A DNA stretch of 47,842 nt from Octopus bimaculoides (taxonomy: Eukaryota): assembly GCF_001194135.2 (NCBI RefSeq), contig NC_068982.1, positions 47,748,381 through 47,796,222 on the forward strand, written 5' to 3'. The position numbers and the translations under genes were made by a program. The notes under the pieces were generated by a model, which saw only the letters and a list, made by a program, of their open reading frames with translations, was not told where the DNA came from and did not search any database. Shown piece after piece: positions 5,627 to 44,882 of this stretch; the stretch's first letter is position 1; every line of letters begins with the position of its first letter.

Positions 5627-5954
5627 TGCCTGTTTATGATTCTACCACGGATTGGGTAGGGACTTATTTAGGGCAGCATTTAATGTTTCTCCTGCTACCA
5701 ACCTTTTCTTATTTCACAAGTATGAGATATTTTTCCTTTATTTCACTAGTTTTTGAAAGTGCAGAGTAGCCAATCATAATATCAATAAAAACTGGAACAT
5801 CATATCAGCAGACAGTGATAAGTGAAACCATAGAATATTAATATTTGTGCACATACAAACACATATGCATGTATATGTGTGTATCTATATATGTATATAT
5901 ATTTATCTCTTTCTATATATAGATATGTATATGTGTGTGTATACACACATAATG

Positions 5955-6357
5955 GTATCAGCACTAAGCAGTGATGAGGAATAAACAAGCTTTAGGTTAG
6001 TTAAAATATGTTCTGACATATAACTTTAGGTTAGTTAACTAACCTAAAGTTCGTTTATTCCTCATCACTCATAGCACTGATACGATCGCATTCACTCCAA
6101 CCAGGATGATATTGACTTTTTAAGATAAAGCTACTGCTTTAGAATCTACATGAGTTATCTCTCTTTAGTATCTCCTACTGAGGATGACTAAAGTGTCAGA
6201 AATCATGTCTGGGAGTCTGCTAGGAGGAGATACTGAGAAGATATAGAGTTTTTACACCTTCTACTATAAGCGAGAATTTTTCTCCATGGTACATACAGTG
6301 AATTTGTCTTCAGAAGTTGAAATATGTCATAAGCATATTTGAACTAACCTAAAGTTC
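5955..6357 (+). mobile_element. Retrozyme/PLE-like short element: ~305-nt monomer plus inverted junction copy
   Basis: 16-nt direct repeat aactaacctaaagttc at 6037 and 6342. Perfect 30-bp palindrome at 6022-6051. 5955-6021 is an inverted copy of the end-to-start junction. Contains a hammerhead. Confidence 0.65.
6172..6215 (+). ncRNA. Type I hammerhead ribozyme motif
   Basis: CTCCTA-CTGAGGA-TGAC(taaagt)GTCA-GAAA-tcat-GTC|TGGGAG. CUGANGA and GAAA core, 4-bp stem II, 6-bp stem I, GUC cleavage after 6209. Confidence 0.75.
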
Positions 6358-6371
6358 AAATATAGTAGTAG

Positions 6372-6590
6372 GGGGCCTTGTGGCTTAGTGGTTAAGGAGT
6401 TCAATTCATGATTGTAAGATTGCGGTTTCAATTCCTTGACTGGGCAATGCGTTGTGTTCTTGAGCAAAACATTTAATTTCATGTTGCTCCAGTCCTCTCA
6501 GCTGGCAAAAATGAGTAATCTTGTGACAGATTGGTGTCCCATCCAGGTGGGAGTATATGGACTATGGAAACCAGTCCTATTAGTGAGTCT
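6372..6590 (+). mobile_element. SINE family C (variant 3' end)
   Basis: A-box 'tggcttagtggtt', B-box-like 'ggtttcaattcc', then 'gttgtgttcttgagcaaaac...ttgctccagtc..ctcagctg'. Confidence 0.75.
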
Positions 6591-6993
6591 ATATAAAGTT
6601 CATATATATATATATTGTATTTTGGGATAGTCATTTTTTTCCCCAAATAAACACATTCACACTATATTTGTTCTTCACTCGTTTATTATAGTGAACAACA
6701 TGAAATACAAGACCAAATGAGTTGAATACACAAACGACGAGAGAAACAAATGGAAAACAGGACAAGTAACATAAAGAAGGAATGTTCATCAGTTGTTAGC
6801 TGCATATCTACTCCTCATTCCGAGCATTGAATGACAATATGAGTCTTCGAAGGCAGTTTCTCCCACAAAAACCAAAATAAAATTTGGGATTTATGGAGGG
6901 TCAAAGTTGATAACAAAAACAGGACAGTAGAGACATACAAGGAAACTGAACAAAAACAAACATGGAAGGTCGTTAGACCAGACATACACACAA

Positions 6994-7249: not shown

Positions 7250-7450
7250 TATTTATTTAAAGATCACAATATATGTATTAAAGTGCTACCAATAGTTTCA
7301 TATATTGAGAGAACTCAAGCCACATATCAAGCCACATATCATAATGAACTAAAGAAATTGATTTGCACCTGAAGATTATGTTTGAGTTCTCTCAAAATAT
7401 GAAACTATTAGTAGCACTTTAATACATGTATTGTGACCTTTAAATAAATA
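7250..7450. repeat. 69-bp inverted repeat with a degenerate hammerhead-like core
   Basis: Arms 7250-7318 and 7382-7450, 4 mismatches. CTGAAGA at 7369, hairpin, GAAAC at 7401. Confidence 0.8.
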
Positions 7451-13080: not shown

Positions 13081-13255
13081 ATAAAGTATTAAATATAGAT
13101 ATAAAATACAACATGTTATAGATAGAATATAAGTTTGGGAAATTGCCGCAGAATTTATTCAATAAAGCTGAAACTTACTTGAGACTTGTTTTTAAGAGTA
13201 TATAAATTAATAATCTATATTATAATAAAGAAATCAGCTTATCAATTAGGGTGGA

Positions 13256-13393
13256 TACAGTTCTATATTTAAGAGATGAGGAATTATTTACATTATTTAC
13301 ATTATCTACATTTGACGGATATTCGTCCTCATGTGTTAACAACAAACAAGATGAGGACGAATATCCGTCAAATGTAGATAATGTAAATAATGT
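13256..13393. mobile_element. PLE-derived fold-back insertion with 12-bp TSD
   Basis: TSD aattagggtgga at 13244-13255 and 13394-13405. Perfect 45-bp inverted arms at 13288-13332 and 13351-13395. Same family as 33134-33300 and 44550-44882. Confidence 0.85.
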
Positions 13394-13879
13394 AATTAGG
13401 GTGGAGTTTGTATCTTTTACTAAAAGACAATGATTACTAAAGTCTATGCAGTTTAGAAAGTTCTTATAAATTTCTATTTTAATTCATTTTTCTCAAAATT
13501 AGGTTTTCAAAATTCTTTTACTATCGAAGATTGCAACTGCCTTTATGATGGTTCCTAGGATACTCTATACATTAAGAATCTGCATCAGTTTGACTTGGTG
13601 AATTGAATCGAATGTTTTACCAATCTTTGATACTGTCAAACAGCTGTTATGCTACAAGAATTTGAAGATAACGGTTTTATACACGGAAACATATTTTTAA
13701 AAGTTATATTTTGTAGATTTTAGTTGCAGTTATTGATAAACTAATGCTTCTGTATTGTTAAGAATAAAATTTCATTTCTTTGAGATAGCTCCTTGATTAC
13801 TTTTCACACAAAACTCAATTTTGGAAGACAGTGTAAACAAAATGGTGCTGAAAGAAAACACACGAAGAAAGAGAATATA

Positions 13880-19794: not shown

Positions 19795-20512
19795 CTGCGT
19801 GGCACCTTGTGCAAGTGTCTTCTACTGTAGCCTCGGGCCGACCAATGCCTTGTGAGTGGATTTGGTAGATGGAAACTGAAAGAAACCCATTGTATATATA
19901 TGTGTGTGTGTATATGTGTGTGTGTGTGTGCATGTGCATATGTATATATATATGTATATGTATATATATATGTATGTATATATATATATATATATATGTA
20001 TATGTGTGTATATATATNNNNNNNNNNNNNNNNNNNNNNNNNNNNNNNNNNNNNNNNNNNNNNNNNNNNNNNNNNNNNNNNNNNNNNNNNNNNNNNNNNN
20101 NNNNNNNNNNNNNNNNNNNNNNNNNNNNNNNNNNNNNNNNNNNNNNNNNNNNNNNNNNNNNNNNNNNNNNNNNNNNNNNNNNNNNNNNNNNNNNNNNNNN
20201 NNNNNNNNNNNNNNNNNNNNNNNNNNNNNNNNNNNNNNNNNNNNNNNNNNNNNNNNNNNNNNNNNNNNNNATATATATATATATGTATATATGTATATAT
20301 GTATGTATGTGTTTGTTGTTTGTGTCTGTGTTTGTTCCCCCACCATCACTTGACAACTGATGTTGGTGTGTTTACATCTCCATCACTTAGTGGTTTTAGC
20401 AAAAAGTAACTGATAGAATAATTACTAGGCTTACATAGAATAAGTCGATTTATTTGACTAAATGTGGTGCACAGGCATGGCCACAGTCAAATGATTGAAA
20501 TAAGTAAAAGAG
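19795..20512 (+). mobile_element. SINE family A, 5'-truncated; internal microsatellite expanded across a gap
   Basis: Core, TA/TG tract with N-gap, 3' body, tail. Confidence 0.9.
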
Positions 20513-20552
20513 TTTGGCTGCTTGTTTCTCTGGAGACTGTCAGAACAATGTA

Positions 20553-20602
20553 GACACCTCTGATGAGAGCCCAATAAGGTTCGAAAATTGATTTAGGCTG
20601 TT
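20553..20602 (+). ncRNA. Degenerate type I hammerhead motif
   Basis: GACACCT-CTGATGA-GAGCC(caataa)GGTTC-GAAA-attgattt-AGG(C)TGTT. Exact core, 5-bp stem II, 7-bp stem I with one bulge; stem III and triplet (UUU) weak. Confidence 0.55.
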
Positions 20603-26947: not shown

Positions 26948-27280
26948 GTGCATGGCTCTGTGGTTAGAGCATCCGACACACGCTCATGAGATAGTGAGTT
27001 CAAATCCTGGACAAGGTTGTGTTGTGTTCTTGAGCAAGACACTATTTCATGTTACTCCAGTTCACTCAGCTGTAGAAATGAGTTGCGACATCACAGGTGC
27101 CAAGCTGTATCGGCCTTTACCTTTCCCTTGGGTAACATAAGTGGCATGGGGAGAGGAGGCTGTTATGCATGGGCCACTGTTGGCCTTCCACAAAACCAAC
27201 CTTGCCCAAACTTGTGGTCTTGGAAGGTAACTCTGTAGATGCAATCCCATGTCATTCATGACTGAAAGGGGTCTTTGCTC
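26948..27280 (+). mobile_element. SINE family C
   Basis: A-box 'tggctctgtggtt', B-box 'gagttcaaatcc', 'tgttgtgttcttgagcaagacact...ccagttcactcagctgtagaaatgag' CORE-like block. Homologous to 34316-34650. Confidence 0.85.
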
Positions 27281-33055: not shown

Positions 33056-33191
33056 GCCTGCTCATACAATGTGAAAATAATGGTCAACTTTCACAGACAG
33101 AAACCTTACAATATATGATACATAAGCAATTGAGTACATTATTTACATTATTTACATTTGACGGATATTTGTCCTCATCTTGTTTGTTGTT

Positions 33192-33237
33192 AACGCAACG
33201 TTTCGGCTGATATACCCTCCAGCCTTCTTCAGGTGTC
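33192..33237 (-). ncRNA. Minimal type I hammerhead ribozyme (PLE-associated)
   Basis: GACAC-CTGAAGA-A-GGCTG(gagggtatat)CAGCC-GAAA-CGTT|GCGTT. Palindromic ACGT stem III; cleavage predicted between 33197 and 33196. Confidence 0.8.
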
Positions 33238-33285
33238 TTGGGGAAATTTCGAACCTGGGTTCTCATTCCTAAGGTATTTGTTTGA

Positions 33286-33325
<40 letters not shown>

Positions 33326-33329
<4 letters not shown>

Positions 33330-33401
33330 TCACTGCCTGCAATCAAACTCGGAATCTTGGGGTTAGTAGCCTGCGCTCTTAACCACTACGCCATATGCCT
33401 G
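33326..33401 (-). other. 76-nt tRNA-like module with Pol III A/B boxes in the PLE 3' region (not a tRNA gene)
   Basis: CAGGCATATGGCGTAGTGGTTAAGAGCGCAGGCTACTAACCCCAAGATTCCGAGTTTGATTGCAGGCAGTGACCTG. A-box TGGCGTAGTGG, decayed B-box GAGTTTGATT, terminal CAGG/CCTG pairing. Confidence 0.7.
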
Positions 33402-37927: not shown

Positions 37928-38520
37928 CAGGGTTTGGACAAAATAATGGAAACACCTGGCATCATAACATCATAATTTTGAAATATCTATAAAACCATCA
38001 AAAGCTTGTTTATTTTTATGTTTTTTGATTTATTATTAGTGTTGCTTCATATGTTTTGCGAAAACTGCAGTTTTTTTTTTTTCAGATATCATCAGAAAAA
38101 GGTAATTAAAATTCATTAAAATGACAGATCTATCAGACTTTCAAAGAGGTCAAATTGTTGGTGCTCGTATGGCAGGCACTAGTGTAACAAAAACATCCGC
38201 AGTGTTTGGTGTATCAAGAAGTACTGTCTTGAAAGTAATGACAGCCTTTGAGAAAGAGGGAAAAACCTTGTTAAAACAAAACTCCGGAAGAAAACCAAAA
38301 CTTTCAGATAGGGACCATCGGACTCTTACGCGAATTGTTAGAAAGGATCACAAAAGTACAGCTCCCATTTTACTGCAGAGCTTAATGACCACCTCGAGAA
38401 CCCAGTTTCCACAAAAACTGTTTTCCAGGAGCTGCACAAAGCAGGATTTCATGGGAGAGCTGCAATCAGAAAACCACTACTTTCAAAAACAAACGTTGCA
38501 GAACATTTAGTGCGGAGTAA
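37928..38520 (+). mobile_element. Tc1-like transposon 5' fragment (TIR plus paired-like HTH)
   Basis: TA followed by 'cagggtttggacaaaataatggaaacacc'. ORF 38121 'MTDLSDFQRGQIVGARMAGTSVTKT...GVSRSTV..VM...GRKPKLSDRD', then a frameshift to 'ELNDHLENPVSTKTV..ELHKAGFHGRAAIRKPLL'. Confidence 0.9.
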
Positions 38521-39539: not shown

Positions 39540-40610
39540 TGTACACAGACATAACAGAAATAAATAGACACCCTTATAATCATTAGAATTTATTTAAATC
39601 TGAAATTATACATTGAAATTTTTTATTAATTGTTATAATGTGAATATTTAATATTTAGTAGACATGCCCTTCGCATTTTTCAATGCATAGACCCTATTAG
39701 GCATGCTACTGATCAGATGATGAATATTCTCTTGCAGAGTTTCTTGCCAAGTTTCATACAGTAATCTCAAAAGATCTGGCTTTGAAGATGCTTTCTTGTT
39801 CTTTTAATGAAATATCCTGTCCATTATGTCACAGAGGTGTTCAATAGGGTTCATATCTGGTAACTGGCCATGGAAGCTTTTTAATGCCATTCTCATTCAA
39901 CAAATCTTGGGTCATTTTAGCCGTGTGACAAGGAGCCCCATCTTCCATAAATATAGATTCATCTTTAATTATTTCATCACTGGAGAAGATTGGAAGGTGT
40001 CCTTTCTGCAATATGGGCACATATTTACCTGAGTTTATGTTTCCCTCACGCTCCACCAGCTCTGATCAACCATTGCTCCAAATTGCTCCCCAGACCATCA
40101 CAGATGTTTTCATTGTTGGCTGCAATCTTTACACATCAAATTCTTGATTACAGAGTCCCCAGACCCACACTCAACCTCTGTCAGGAAATACAGCAAACCT
40201 GGACCCATCAGAGAATATGACAGTGTCCTAAAATGCTAGTAGCCTCTCCACCATCTCACTGGTCCAATCTTCTCTCCACTTGATGTTGGCTGGTTGAAGA
40301 AGTGGCTTCCTTCTTGCTGCTCTGCCATAGTAACCAAGTTTATGGAGATAGCTGACAGCTGTTCTGGGACTGACATCAACTTGTTCTGCTATGTCGGAGG
40401 CCTTACAATGAGGATTATCCTCCACACTTCTCTTAACAAAGAGAAGAGTCCTGTCATTGGGCCCTGGTTGATCTGAATGAGGTGATGTGGACTCCTTCCC
40501 CTCTCTGGTGAATTGCACAATCGCCATATTAACTGTAGGAAGTGGAATCCCAAAGTCTTCTGAGATTTTACACTGATTATGTCCACCTTCAGAATGACCC
40601 ACAATATGGC

Positions 40611-44549: not shown

Positions 44550-44882
<333 letters not shown>

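What the first reader, a model, noticed from the sequence alone, without database searches (positions are those of the whole stretch)
5955..6357. ~305-nt retrozyme-like monomer with an inverted copy spanning its end-to-start junction
Seen: aactaacctaaagttc occurs at 6037 and again 305 nt later at 6342, with a hammerhead between. The reverse complement of 5955-6021 (atatgtcagaacatattttaactaacctaaagcttgtttattcctcatcact...) matches the monomer END (6322-6341) joined to its START (6037-6083). A perfect 30-bp palindrome (6022-6051) links the two. Established: animal retrozymes are ~170-400-nt hammerhead-containing repeats that yield circular RNAs. Inference: the template was circular or multimeric RNA copied with template switching.
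Basis: partly seen in the sequence, partly recalled or inferred. Interest (0 to 1): 0.85.

Follow-up and report, generated by a model that had tools for sequence, protein, structure and literature searches.

The report
Hammerhead retroelement with Penelope-style insertion
A 305-base non-coding mobile element with a hammerhead self-cleaving RNA motif sits here as one copy plus 16 extra bases, joined head-to-head to a short inverted copy; this layout matches the known insertion signature of Penelope-like retroelements, so it is real but belongs to a known class.

Summary
The 16-mer AACTAACCTAAAGTTC sits at 6037 and 6342, 305 nt apart. Positions 6022-6051 form a perfect 30-bp palindrome. The reverse complement of 5955-6021 reads unit-end joined to unit-start at about 87% identity. 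A complete type-I hammerhead lies at 6172-6215, with a 6-bp helix I, CUGAGGA, a 4-bp helix II, GAAA, a 2-bp helix III and cleavage after C6209. My descriptor expects 0.003 such motifs per window and found none in 20,000 shuffles of the region. Rfam's hammerhead models miss it. [quoted passage not shown] A second, unrelated hammerhead repeat in the same window shows the same signature, with a 12-bp target duplication and a 5' end exactly at its predicted cleavage site. Best reading: a solo copy of a retrozyme-like, PLE-mobilised non-autonomous element copied from a multimeric or circular RNA. I found no tandem array and no other copy. Self-cleavage and circular RNA could not be tested. It is a new member of a known kind, of modest interest.

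The parts
5869..5954 (.). Left flank: TA/TG-rich microsatellite-like DNA, the presumed target
   Evidence: Tandem Repeats Finder rows 5882-5932 (TA)n and 5869-5943 (ATGTAT)n; sequence.
5955..5986 (-). 3' end of the inverted copy: a 32-nt 'tail' equal to unit positions 17-47. The direct copy lacks this after its own 3' end.
   Evidence: rc = GTTTATTCCTCATCACTGCTTAGTGCTGATAC, against 6053-6083 GTTTATTCCTCATCACTCATAGCACTGATAC. Homology stops exactly at 5955 and at 6083.
5987..6002 (-). X motif inside the inverted copy (AACTAACCTAAAGCTT), marking the unit junction
6003..6021 (-). Unit-end 'spacer' hairpin in the inverted copy (ATATGTCAGAACATATTTT)
   Evidence: Matches 6322-6341 with 3 differences, 2 of them in the hairpin loop.
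6022..6036 (-). Extra X motif (15 nt) forming the left half of the perfect 30-bp palindrome. Its junction with the spacer at 6021|6022 is not colinear with the unit.
6037..6357 (+). Direct copy: one 305-nt unit plus a 16-nt terminal redundancy (X at both ends)
   Evidence: GC 36%. No ORF longer than 24 aa and no stop-free stretch longer than 46 aa.
6172..6215 (+). Type-I hammerhead motif. Helix I 6172-6177 with 6210-6215; core CTGAGGA 6178-6184; helix II 6185-6188 with 6195-6198; GAAA 6199-6202; short helix III 6202-6208; predicted cleavage between 6209 and 6210.
   Evidence: Descriptor search and shuffles. The architecture matches the published canonical metazoan type-I hammerhead: 6-bp helix I, 4-bp helix II, 1-2-bp helix III with a 2-4-nt loop (PMC4209133).
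6184..6246 (+). 20-codon ORF whose ATG is A9-U10.1-G10.2 of the hammerhead. It may be a remnant of a PLE ORF start.
   Evidence: In the anole PLE the ORF starts at stem II and the cut site is 26 bp downstream (PMC11167929). Here 6184-6209 is 26 nt.
6322..6341 (+). Unit-end spacer hairpin (ATATG-TCATAAG-CATAT) of the direct copy
6335..6363 (+). 11-bp stem with a 7-nt A/C-rich loop (ATATTTGAACT-AACCTAA-AGTTCAAATAT) spanning the direct copy's 3' end. Candidate site where reverse transcription started.
   Evidence: Fold of -10.8 kcal/mol. The anole PLE starts reverse transcription in an AC-rich stem-loop (PMC11167929).
6372..6592 (+). Later, unrelated SINE insertion with a weakly tRNA-like head. 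Not part of the element.
   Evidence: Flanked by TAAAGTTCAAATAT (6350-6363) and TAAAGTTCATATAT (6593-6606), a 13/14 target duplication that includes the end of X. Rfam tRNA scores 17 bits, below threshold. Other partial copies exist in the window. With the SINE removed, the right flank is (TA)n.

Best explanation
Positions 5955-6357 are a single genomic insertion of a short (305-nt), non-coding, hammerhead-bearing retroelement. It is retrozyme-like, that is, a non-autonomous derivative of a Penelope-like element (PLE), and it was integrated by PLE-type target-primed reverse transcription.

Proposed mechanism:
1. The element's RNA is longer than one unit, either an unprocessed multimeric transcript or a ligated circle.
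2. A PLE reverse transcriptase/GIY-YIG endonuclease supplied in trans binds this RNA.
3. The enzyme nicks both strands of AT-rich microsatellite DNA.
4. Each nick primes cDNA synthesis from an internal start site on the RNA.
5. Bottom-strand priming started at the A/C-rich X stem-loop (unit position ~16) and copied 321 nt, giving the direct copy 6037-6357.
6. Top-strand priming started 31 nt further 3' on the template (unit position 47, the 'tail' site). It copied back across the unit junction, giving the inverted copy 5955-6036.
7. The two cDNAs were joined head-to-head at X, producing the 30-bp palindrome.

Shown here: the repeat geometry, the hammerhead motif, the one-sided 31-32-nt extension, the microsatellite flanks, and the same signature in a second hammerhead repeat in the window.

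Inferred: the RNA template, mobilisation in trans by a PLE enzyme, the start sites, and a single-event origin.

The hammerhead would process multimeric transcripts, cutting after C6209. This copy may be weak or inactive.
For: - **Hammerhead.** A full type-I motif lies at 6172-6215. Chance expectation is 0.003 per window and 0 of 20,000 regional shuffles produced one. Its helix sizes (6 bp, 4 bp, 2 bp with a 3-nt loop) equal the published canonical metazoan architecture (PMC4209133).
- **More-than-unit copy.** X is identical at both ends of 6037-6357, and the inverted piece reads spacer-X-unit start.
[quoted passage not shown] Here the inverted copy abuts the 5' end of the direct copy. Its outer end reaches 31-32 nt further into the unit than the direct copy's outer end. 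The flanks are TA/TG repeats on the left and (TA)n on the right once the later SINE is removed.
- **Mechanistic precedent.** The anole PLE protein cleaves and extends both DNA strands. It starts reverse transcription at two internal sites in an AC-rich stem-loop, and the interval between them is the 'tail'. It prefers AT-rich DNA and uses unprocessed RNA (PMC11167929). The direct copy's 3' end lies in an A/C-rich-looped hairpin.
- **Novel junctions.** The two X-adjacent novel junctions (6021|6022 and 6357|6358) fall at unit positions 15 and 16, as a discrete start site would predict.
- **Independent support in the same window.** A second hammerhead repeat (44577-44740, 33138-33304, 13258-13393) forms an inverted pair flanked by a 12-bp target duplication. 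One 5' end lies exactly at its predicted cleavage site, and its alternative 3' ends are 32-34 nt apart.
- **Class properties.** Retrozyme units are 170-400 nt, below 50% GC and non-coding; dispersed monomers are known; and retrozymes have been linked to PLE pLTRs (PMC7229834; bioRxiv 10.64898/2026.07.22.740005). This unit is 305 nt and 36% GC.
Against: - Only one locus is available. There is no other copy in the window, in JGI metagenome contigs or in IMG/VR, so family membership, copy number and consensus ends are untested.
- Rfam hammerhead models give no hit even at E<=10. They also miss the second, independently supported hammerhead, so this weighs less.
- The 10.1-11.1 pair is U-A rather than the highly conserved G-C.
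- The helix III loop is not palindromic.
- The hammerhead fold is 9-11 kcal/mol less stable than a competing hairpin.
- The circular fold of the unit is unremarkable (z = -1.05; 34% of same-size genomic chunks fold as well or better).
- No target-site duplication is visible.
- The two arms differ by about 13%, which is awkward if both came from one RNA in one event.
- The extra X at 6022-6036 is not explained by simple two-strand priming.
- None of the ORFs of at least 100 aa listed for the window looked like a PLE reverse transcriptase or endonuclease by eye. No profile search was run.
Confidence: 0.62

Rival explanations
1. Two independent insertions. Two members of the same hammerhead element family landed in opposite orientations at the same microsatellite hotspot, or the second landed in the first, since PLE enzymes also nick their own sequence. 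This would not be one two-strand priming event.
For: The arms differ by about 13%, more than expected for two cDNAs from one template unless the insertion is old. [quoted passage not shown] Retrozyme RNA populations are heterogeneous (PMC7229834).
Against: The two copies abut with no intervening base, at the same unit position, giving a perfect 30-bp palindrome. All four X cores are identical while the neighbouring sequence differs. The second hammerhead repeat at 13.3 kb shows an inverted pair inside a single 12-bp target duplication, which is one event.
Confidence: 0.15
2. DNA-level origin. The locus is a decayed remnant of a tandem satellite or retrozyme array that was rearranged by replication template switching or by hairpin-mediated inverted duplication. 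The palindrome would be a DNA repair scar rather than a product of reverse transcription.
For: Perfect palindromes with short filler segments are typical of fork-switching and fold-back repair (my own knowledge). X has self-complementary ends (AACT...AGTT) and the junction centre AGTTAACT is palindromic. Microsatellite surroundings are rearrangement-prone.
Against: This does not predict outer ends at two discrete unit positions 31 nt apart, nor an end inside an A/C-rich hairpin. It also does not predict the recurrence of the same tail and inverted-pair geometry in an unrelated hammerhead repeat bounded by a clean target duplication. There is no trace of further array units on either side.
Confidence: 0.13
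3. Not a ribozyme element at all. It would be a foldback or MITE-type DNA transposon, or a chance inverted repeat, that happens to contain a hammerhead-like string.
For: 5955-6083 folds as a long hairpin and gives weak generic matches to microRNA-precursor models. Rfam hammerhead models do not match.
Against: A full hammerhead by chance is expected about 3e-5 times in a region of this size. The inverted arms are not terminal to any element bounded by a target duplication. The left arm reproduces the unit's end-to-start junction, which a MITE model does not explain.
Confidence: 0.03

Closest known systems
Metazoan non-LTR retrozymes (Cervera & de la Pena 2020, PMC7229834; Li et al. 2026 preprint, 10.64898/2026.07.22.740005)
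   Same: The unit is 305 nt (published range 170-400), 36% GC (published <50%), non-coding, and carries a type-I hammerhead. Dispersed monomeric derivatives are described in the literature. A PLE origin has been proposed.
   Different: Only 1.05 units are present here, with no tandem array. The predicted circle is not unusually self-paired. Circular RNA expression and copy number are unknown. The hammerhead has U10.1-A11.1.
Penelope-like element insertions and pLTRs (Arkhipova; Craig et al. 2021, PMC8557442; Frangieh et al. 2024, PMC11167929)
   Same: The locus shows a partial tandem, an inverted 5'-truncated copy at the 5' end, a one-sided 31-32-nt tail, an AT/microsatellite target and no clear target duplication. 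The hammerhead lies about 150-180 nt upstream of the 3' end. An ATG sits at the start of hammerhead stem II, with the cut site 26 nt downstream.
   Different: There is no reverse transcriptase/GIY-YIG ORF, and the whole unit is 305 nt. The hammerhead has the canonical 6/4-bp architecture, not the 'minimal' PLE variant with a long helix II and a bulged base. That minimal variant is what the second repeat in this window carries.
Minimal and dimeric type-I hammerheads of Schistosoma Sm-alpha, newt satellite 2 and PLEs (PMC4209133)
   Same: Helix I is open, helix III is very short, and the motif sits in a repeat.
   Different: Helix III here (A-U, U-G with a CAU loop) is not a palindrome, so the usual dimer helix III would pair poorly. 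No second copy lies nearby to dimerise with.
LINE-1 twin priming inversions (my own knowledge, not tested here)
   Same: One retrotransposition event primed from both target strands yields an inverted segment next to a direct segment.
   Different: L1 starts at the poly(A) tail. Here there is no poly(A); the ends lie at internal sites, the segments overlap in content, and the template is longer than one unit.

Membership tests
Hammerhead ribozyme, type I | Conserved core C3-U4-G5-A6-N7-G8-A9 ... G12-A13-A14 ... A15.1/U16.1-H17 | tested here: met
   CTGAGGA at 6178-6184, GAAA at 6199-6202, T6208, C6209.
Hammerhead ribozyme, type I | Three helices directly abutting the core, with helix I open-ended | tested here: met
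   Helix I is 6 bp (one G-U), helix II is 4 bp with a 6-nt loop, helix III is A-U and U-G with a CAU loop. This equals the published 6/4/1-2-bp architecture.
Hammerhead ribozyme, type I | G10.1-C11.1 closing pair of helix II (highly conserved) | tested here: not met
   The pair is U6185-A6198. Its conservation is stated in PMC4209133.
Hammerhead ribozyme, type I | Match to the Rfam hammerhead covariance models | tested here: not met
   No hit at gathering score or at E<=10 on 1 kb or 91 nt. The models also miss the second hammerhead in the window, so their sensitivity here is poor.
Hammerhead ribozyme, type I | Covariation in the helices across homologues | not testable with these tools
   No homologous copy could be retrieved.
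Hammerhead ribozyme, type I | Self-cleavage at the predicted site | not testable with these tools
   This needs in vitro transcription. The active fold is predicted to be 9-11 kcal/mol above the minimum free energy.
Non-LTR retrozyme | Type-I hammerhead in each unit; unit of 170-400 nt; low GC; no ORF | tested here: met
   Unit of 305 nt, 36% GC, longest ORF 24 aa. Definition from PMC7229834.
Non-LTR retrozyme | Tandem array of two or more units | tested here: not met
   Only 1.05 direct units plus an 82-nt inverted piece. Monomeric derivatives are recognised in the 2026 preprint.
Non-LTR retrozyme | Highly self-paired circular RNA | tested here: inconclusive
   Circular minimum free energy is -65.5 kcal/mol, z = -1.05 against shuffles; 34% of genomic 305-mers fold as well or better.
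Non-LTR retrozyme | Multicopy family expressed as circular RNA | not testable with these tools
There is no second copy in the window.
PLE-type insertion | Partial tandem (more-than-unit copy) | tested here: met
   X lies at both ends of 6037-6357, and the junction is read through in the inverted copy.
PLE-type insertion | Inverted 5'-truncated copy adjacent to the 5' end | tested here: met
   5955-6036 abuts 6037 head-to-head. Feature described in PMC8557442.
PLE-type insertion | 30-40-bp tail at one end only | tested here: met
   A 31-32-nt extension is present at 5955-5986 and absent after 6357. It is just within the published range.
PLE-type insertion | AT-rich or microsatellite target | tested here: met
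   Left flank is (TA)n/(ATGTAT)n. The reconstructed right flank is (TA)n.
PLE-type insertion | Reverse transcription starting in an AC-rich stem-loop | tested here: inconclusive
   The 3' end lies in the hairpin 6335-6363 with loop AACCTAA. Part of that stem is flank sequence, and the start site itself is inferred.
PLE (autonomous) | RT plus GIY-YIG endonuclease ORF | tested here: not met
   There is no such ORF in the unit. Among the window's ORFs of at least 100 aa none looked like one by eye, and no profile search was run. The element can only be non-autonomous.

The most novel reading that the evidence does not exclude
The X stem-loop (AACTAACCTAAAG) may be a site-specific 'origin' on a circular retrozyme RNA, where a PLE reverse transcriptase both starts and stops. 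That would give unit-length-plus-16-nt cDNAs and would join the two-strand products precisely at X. Three of the four copy termini and both non-colinear junctions lie at X. All four X cores are identical, while the neighbouring sequence differs by about 13%. If true, this is a measured, rolling-circle-like reverse transcription with defined termination, which has not been described for PLEs or retrozymes.
Probability: 0.1. Interest if true: 0.6.

Novelty: new member of a known kind. Interest (0 to 1): 0.3.

Why it matters
The locus shows a retrozyme-sized hammerhead unit carrying the structural scars specific to PLE integration: an inverted partner, a one-sided tail of about 31 nt and a microsatellite target. 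If the same holds genome-wide, it would be insertion-level evidence for the recent, phylogeny-based proposal that animal retrozymes are mobilised by Penelope-like elements. The evidence would come from an invertebrate-looking genome. A second hammerhead repeat in the same window has a 5' end exactly at its predicted cleavage site. That suggests self-cleaved RNAs are reverse-transcribed in this organism. On its own, one decayed copy adds little beyond annotation.

Tried and rejected
- **Rfam scans.** I ran the whole window at gathering score, 5700-6700 at E<=10 and 6150-6240 at E<=10. None gave a hammerhead hit, only generic microRNA-hairpin noise on the palindrome. I first read this as 'no hammerhead' and mis-assigned helices I and III by eye. 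A descriptor search corrected that. A control on the second hammerhead showed that Rfam misses that one too.
- **Search for other copies.** A BLAST of the unit against the window found none. Two exact-pattern scans of JGI metagenome contigs and one of IMG/VR found none. A protein search with the longest stop-free frame (46 aa) found no candidates. A look-up of a window ORF to locate the source contig found nothing on record. Searches of paper text and supplements for sequence strings gave only irrelevant hits.
- **Target-duplication reading of the 16-mer.** Rejected, because X also sits inside the inverted copy's junction.
- **piggyBac/TTAA and MITE readings of the palindrome.** Rejected, because there are no bounded terminal repeats or target duplications.
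- **Snap-back models for the extra X.** None reproduces the observed order X-spacer-X. This junction remains unexplained.
- **Viroid-like rod structure.** Circular RNA folding did not support it.
- **tRNA check.** ARAGORN found no tRNA in the SINE heads.

Full report
**Context.** The window is draft eukaryotic DNA. It is 34% GC, contains many N gaps and abundant TA/TG/CA microsatellites, and carries SINE-like repeats with weakly tRNA-like heads and Tc1/mariner-like ORF fragments. I did not identify the organism. The available collections are prokaryotic, viral or metagenomic, so the source genome could not be searched.

The 16-mer AACTAACCTAAAGTTC (called X here) is identical at 6037-6052 and 6342-6357, 305 nt apart. 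Its 13-nt core occurs four times in the window, all in this locus (6037 and 6342 on +, 5990 and 6024 on -), against 0.003 expected by chance. Positions 6022-6051 form a perfect 30-bp palindrome.

In its own sense, the left arm reads X(15) - ATATGTCAGAACATATTTT - AACTAACCTAAAGCTT - GTTTATTCCTCATCACTGCTTAGTGCTGATAC. Everything after the first X is colinear with the direct copy's last 20 nt (6322-6341) followed by its first 47 nt (6037-6083), with 9 differences in about 68 positions. The inverted piece therefore does span the end-to-start junction of a 305-nt unit. No other copy of the unit exists in the window.

**The hammerhead is real as a motif.** Rfam gave no hammerhead hit at gathering score or at E<=10, and my first reading by eye mis-assigned the helices. 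A descriptor search found one complete motif at 6172-6215. The descriptor required:
- CUGANGA
- a helix II of at least 4 bp
- GAAA
- a short helix III closed by A15.1-U16.1
- H17
- a helix I of at least 5 bp directly abutting the core

The motif found is CUCCUA / CUGAGGA / UGAC-UAAAGU-GUCA / GAAA / U-CAU-G / UC^UGGGAG. Dinucleotide shuffles of the window gave 0.003 hits per window, and 20,000 shuffles of 5955-6357 gave none.

The helix sizes equal the published canonical metazoan type-I architecture: helix I 6 bp, helix II 4 bp, helix III 1-2 bp capped by a 2-4-nt loop (PMC4209133).

Several caveats apply:
- The 10.1-11.1 pair is U-A rather than the conserved G-C.
- Loop 3 is not palindromic.
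- The active fold is 9-11 kcal/mol above a competing hairpin.
- The unit folded as a circle is not unusually stable (z = -1.05).

Whether this copy cleaves is therefore open.

**The arrangement matches PLE insertions.** The literature describes PLE insertions as 5'-truncated partial tandems. [quoted passage not shown] They also show a microsatellite insertion bias that often hides target duplications (PMC8557442).

Biochemistry of an anole PLE explains this pattern. The protein nicks and extends both DNA strands and prefers AT-rich DNA. It starts reverse transcription at two internal sites in an AC-rich stem-loop, and the interval between them is the tail. It uses unprocessed RNA (PMC11167929).

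The locus fits each point:
- The direct copy is more than one unit long.
- The inverted copy abuts its 5' end.
- The inverted copy's outer end (5955) lies at unit position 47, while the direct copy's outer end (6357) lies at unit position 16. That is a one-sided tail of 31-32 nt.
- The direct copy's 3' end sits in an 11-bp hairpin with the A/C-rich loop AACCTAA.
- The left flank is (TA)n/(ATGTAT)n.
- The right flank becomes (TA)n once a later SINE is removed. That SINE is bounded by a 13/14 duplication, TAAAGTTCA[A/T]ATAT, that includes the end of X.
- An ATG occupies A9-U10.1-G10.2 of the hammerhead and the cut site is 26 nt from it. This parallels the anole element, whose ORF starts at stem II with the cut site 26 bp downstream.

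**Independent support inside the window.** The same descriptor found a second hammerhead at 44674-44629 (-). It has the PLE 'minimal' architecture: a bulged base after A9, a 6-bp helix II and a 5-bp helix I. It belongs to a different repeat, with copies at 44577-44740 and 33138-33304 and an inverted pair at 13258-13393.

The 13.3-kb pair is bounded by a 12-bp direct repeat, AATTAGGGTGGA, which indicates a single insertion event. One arm begins exactly at the predicted cleavage product, GTGTTAAC. The two arms end 32-34 nt apart. The 33.2-kb copy uses the short end, and the 44.6-kb copy extends past it through the tail to at least the long end.

PLE-type integration of hammerhead RNAs therefore operates in this genome and produces exactly the geometry seen at 5955-6357. 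Rfam misses this hammerhead too, which weakens the negative Rfam result for the main motif.

**Interpretation.** The best reading is a solo, retrozyme-like, non-autonomous PLE derivative copied from an RNA longer than one unit. The direct copy runs uninterrupted through both the hammerhead cleavage site and the X junction, so the template was either an unprocessed multimer or a re-ligated circle. The data cannot tell these apart, and the PLE precedent favours unprocessed RNA.

**Unexplained points.**
- The extra X at 6022-6036 creates a non-colinear X|spacer junction. Re-initiation at the X start site after a template jump would fit, because 6021|6022 and 6357|6358 fall at unit positions 15 and 16. 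This is inference only.
- The arms diverge by about 13%, while all four X cores are identical.
- No target duplication is visible.

**Rivals.** The alternatives are two independent insertions at a hotspot, DNA-level rearrangement of an old array, and a MITE or chance structure. They are scored in their own sections. The last is effectively excluded by the hammerhead statistics.

**Verdict.** The feature is real and correctly described. The 'retrozyme-like' label is reasonable but incomplete. The structure is the known PLE insertion signature on a short hammerhead unit, so it is a new member of a known kind. Family-level confirmation needs the source genome.

Noticed in passing
window 44577-44740 (-), 33138-33304 (-), 13246-13405: This is a second, unrelated hammerhead-bearing repeat. 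A PLE-type minimal hammerhead lies at 44674-44629 (-): GACAC CTGATGA A GGCTGG..CAGCT GAAA TG TT^GTGTT. The 33.2-kb copy has mutations in helices I and III. At 13.3 kb an inverted pair is flanked by the 12-bp duplication AATTAGGGTGGA; one arm starts exactly at the predicted cleavage site, and the two 3' ends differ by 32-34 nt (a 'tail').
   Followed up: partly
window 33330-33400 (-) and 44720-44880 (-): Both longer copies of the second hammerhead repeat are preceded by (AAT)n. At 33.2 kb a tRNA-like SINE head lies upstream of that repeat. Either the repeat inserted into SINE tails, or it is the 3' module of a composite SINE that borrows a PLE 3' end.
   Followed up: no
window 20560-20586 (+): A hammerhead-like core, CTGATGA - 5-bp helix II (GAGCC/GGTTC) - GAAA. 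Helix I is only possible with a bulge, and helix III would be 1 bp. The core lies just outside a high-copy SINE fragment (20402-20513). It could be a degenerate hammerhead or chance.
   Followed up: partly
window 6372-6592 (+): A SINE-like insertion with a weakly tRNA-like head (Rfam tRNA 17 bits, below threshold; ARAGORN finds nothing). It is flanked by TAAAGTTCAAATAT and TAAAGTTCATATAT, so it inserted after the hammerhead element, into that element's 3' edge. Partial copies lie near 26999, 34351, 35392 and 36853.
   Followed up: partly
window 7250-7450: A 92-nt inverted repeat, 84% complementary with a 17-nt gap, which looks like a MITE. It contains a tandem 12-mer, TCAAGCCACATA x2, at 7315-7338.
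   Followed up: no
window 38121-38510 (+) and 40228-40602 (-): ORF fragments that resemble the N-terminal DNA-binding region of Tc1/mariner transposases. This is a judgement by eye and was not searched.
   Followed up: no
window 20402-20513 and about 15 other sites (e.g. 22761, 42736, 16639, 37647, 31453): A high-copy repeat of about 110 nt at 70-80% identity, often next to TG/TA microsatellites. It accounts for the recurring peptide 'NGLLSVS.YQIHSQGFGRPEA' in the mechanical ORF list.
   Followed up: no
window 5968-6071: The palindrome gives below-threshold Rfam matches to several microRNA-precursor models on both strands (best 39 bits against an 80-bit gathering score). These are generic hairpin matches, not evidence of a microRNA.
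   Followed up: yes
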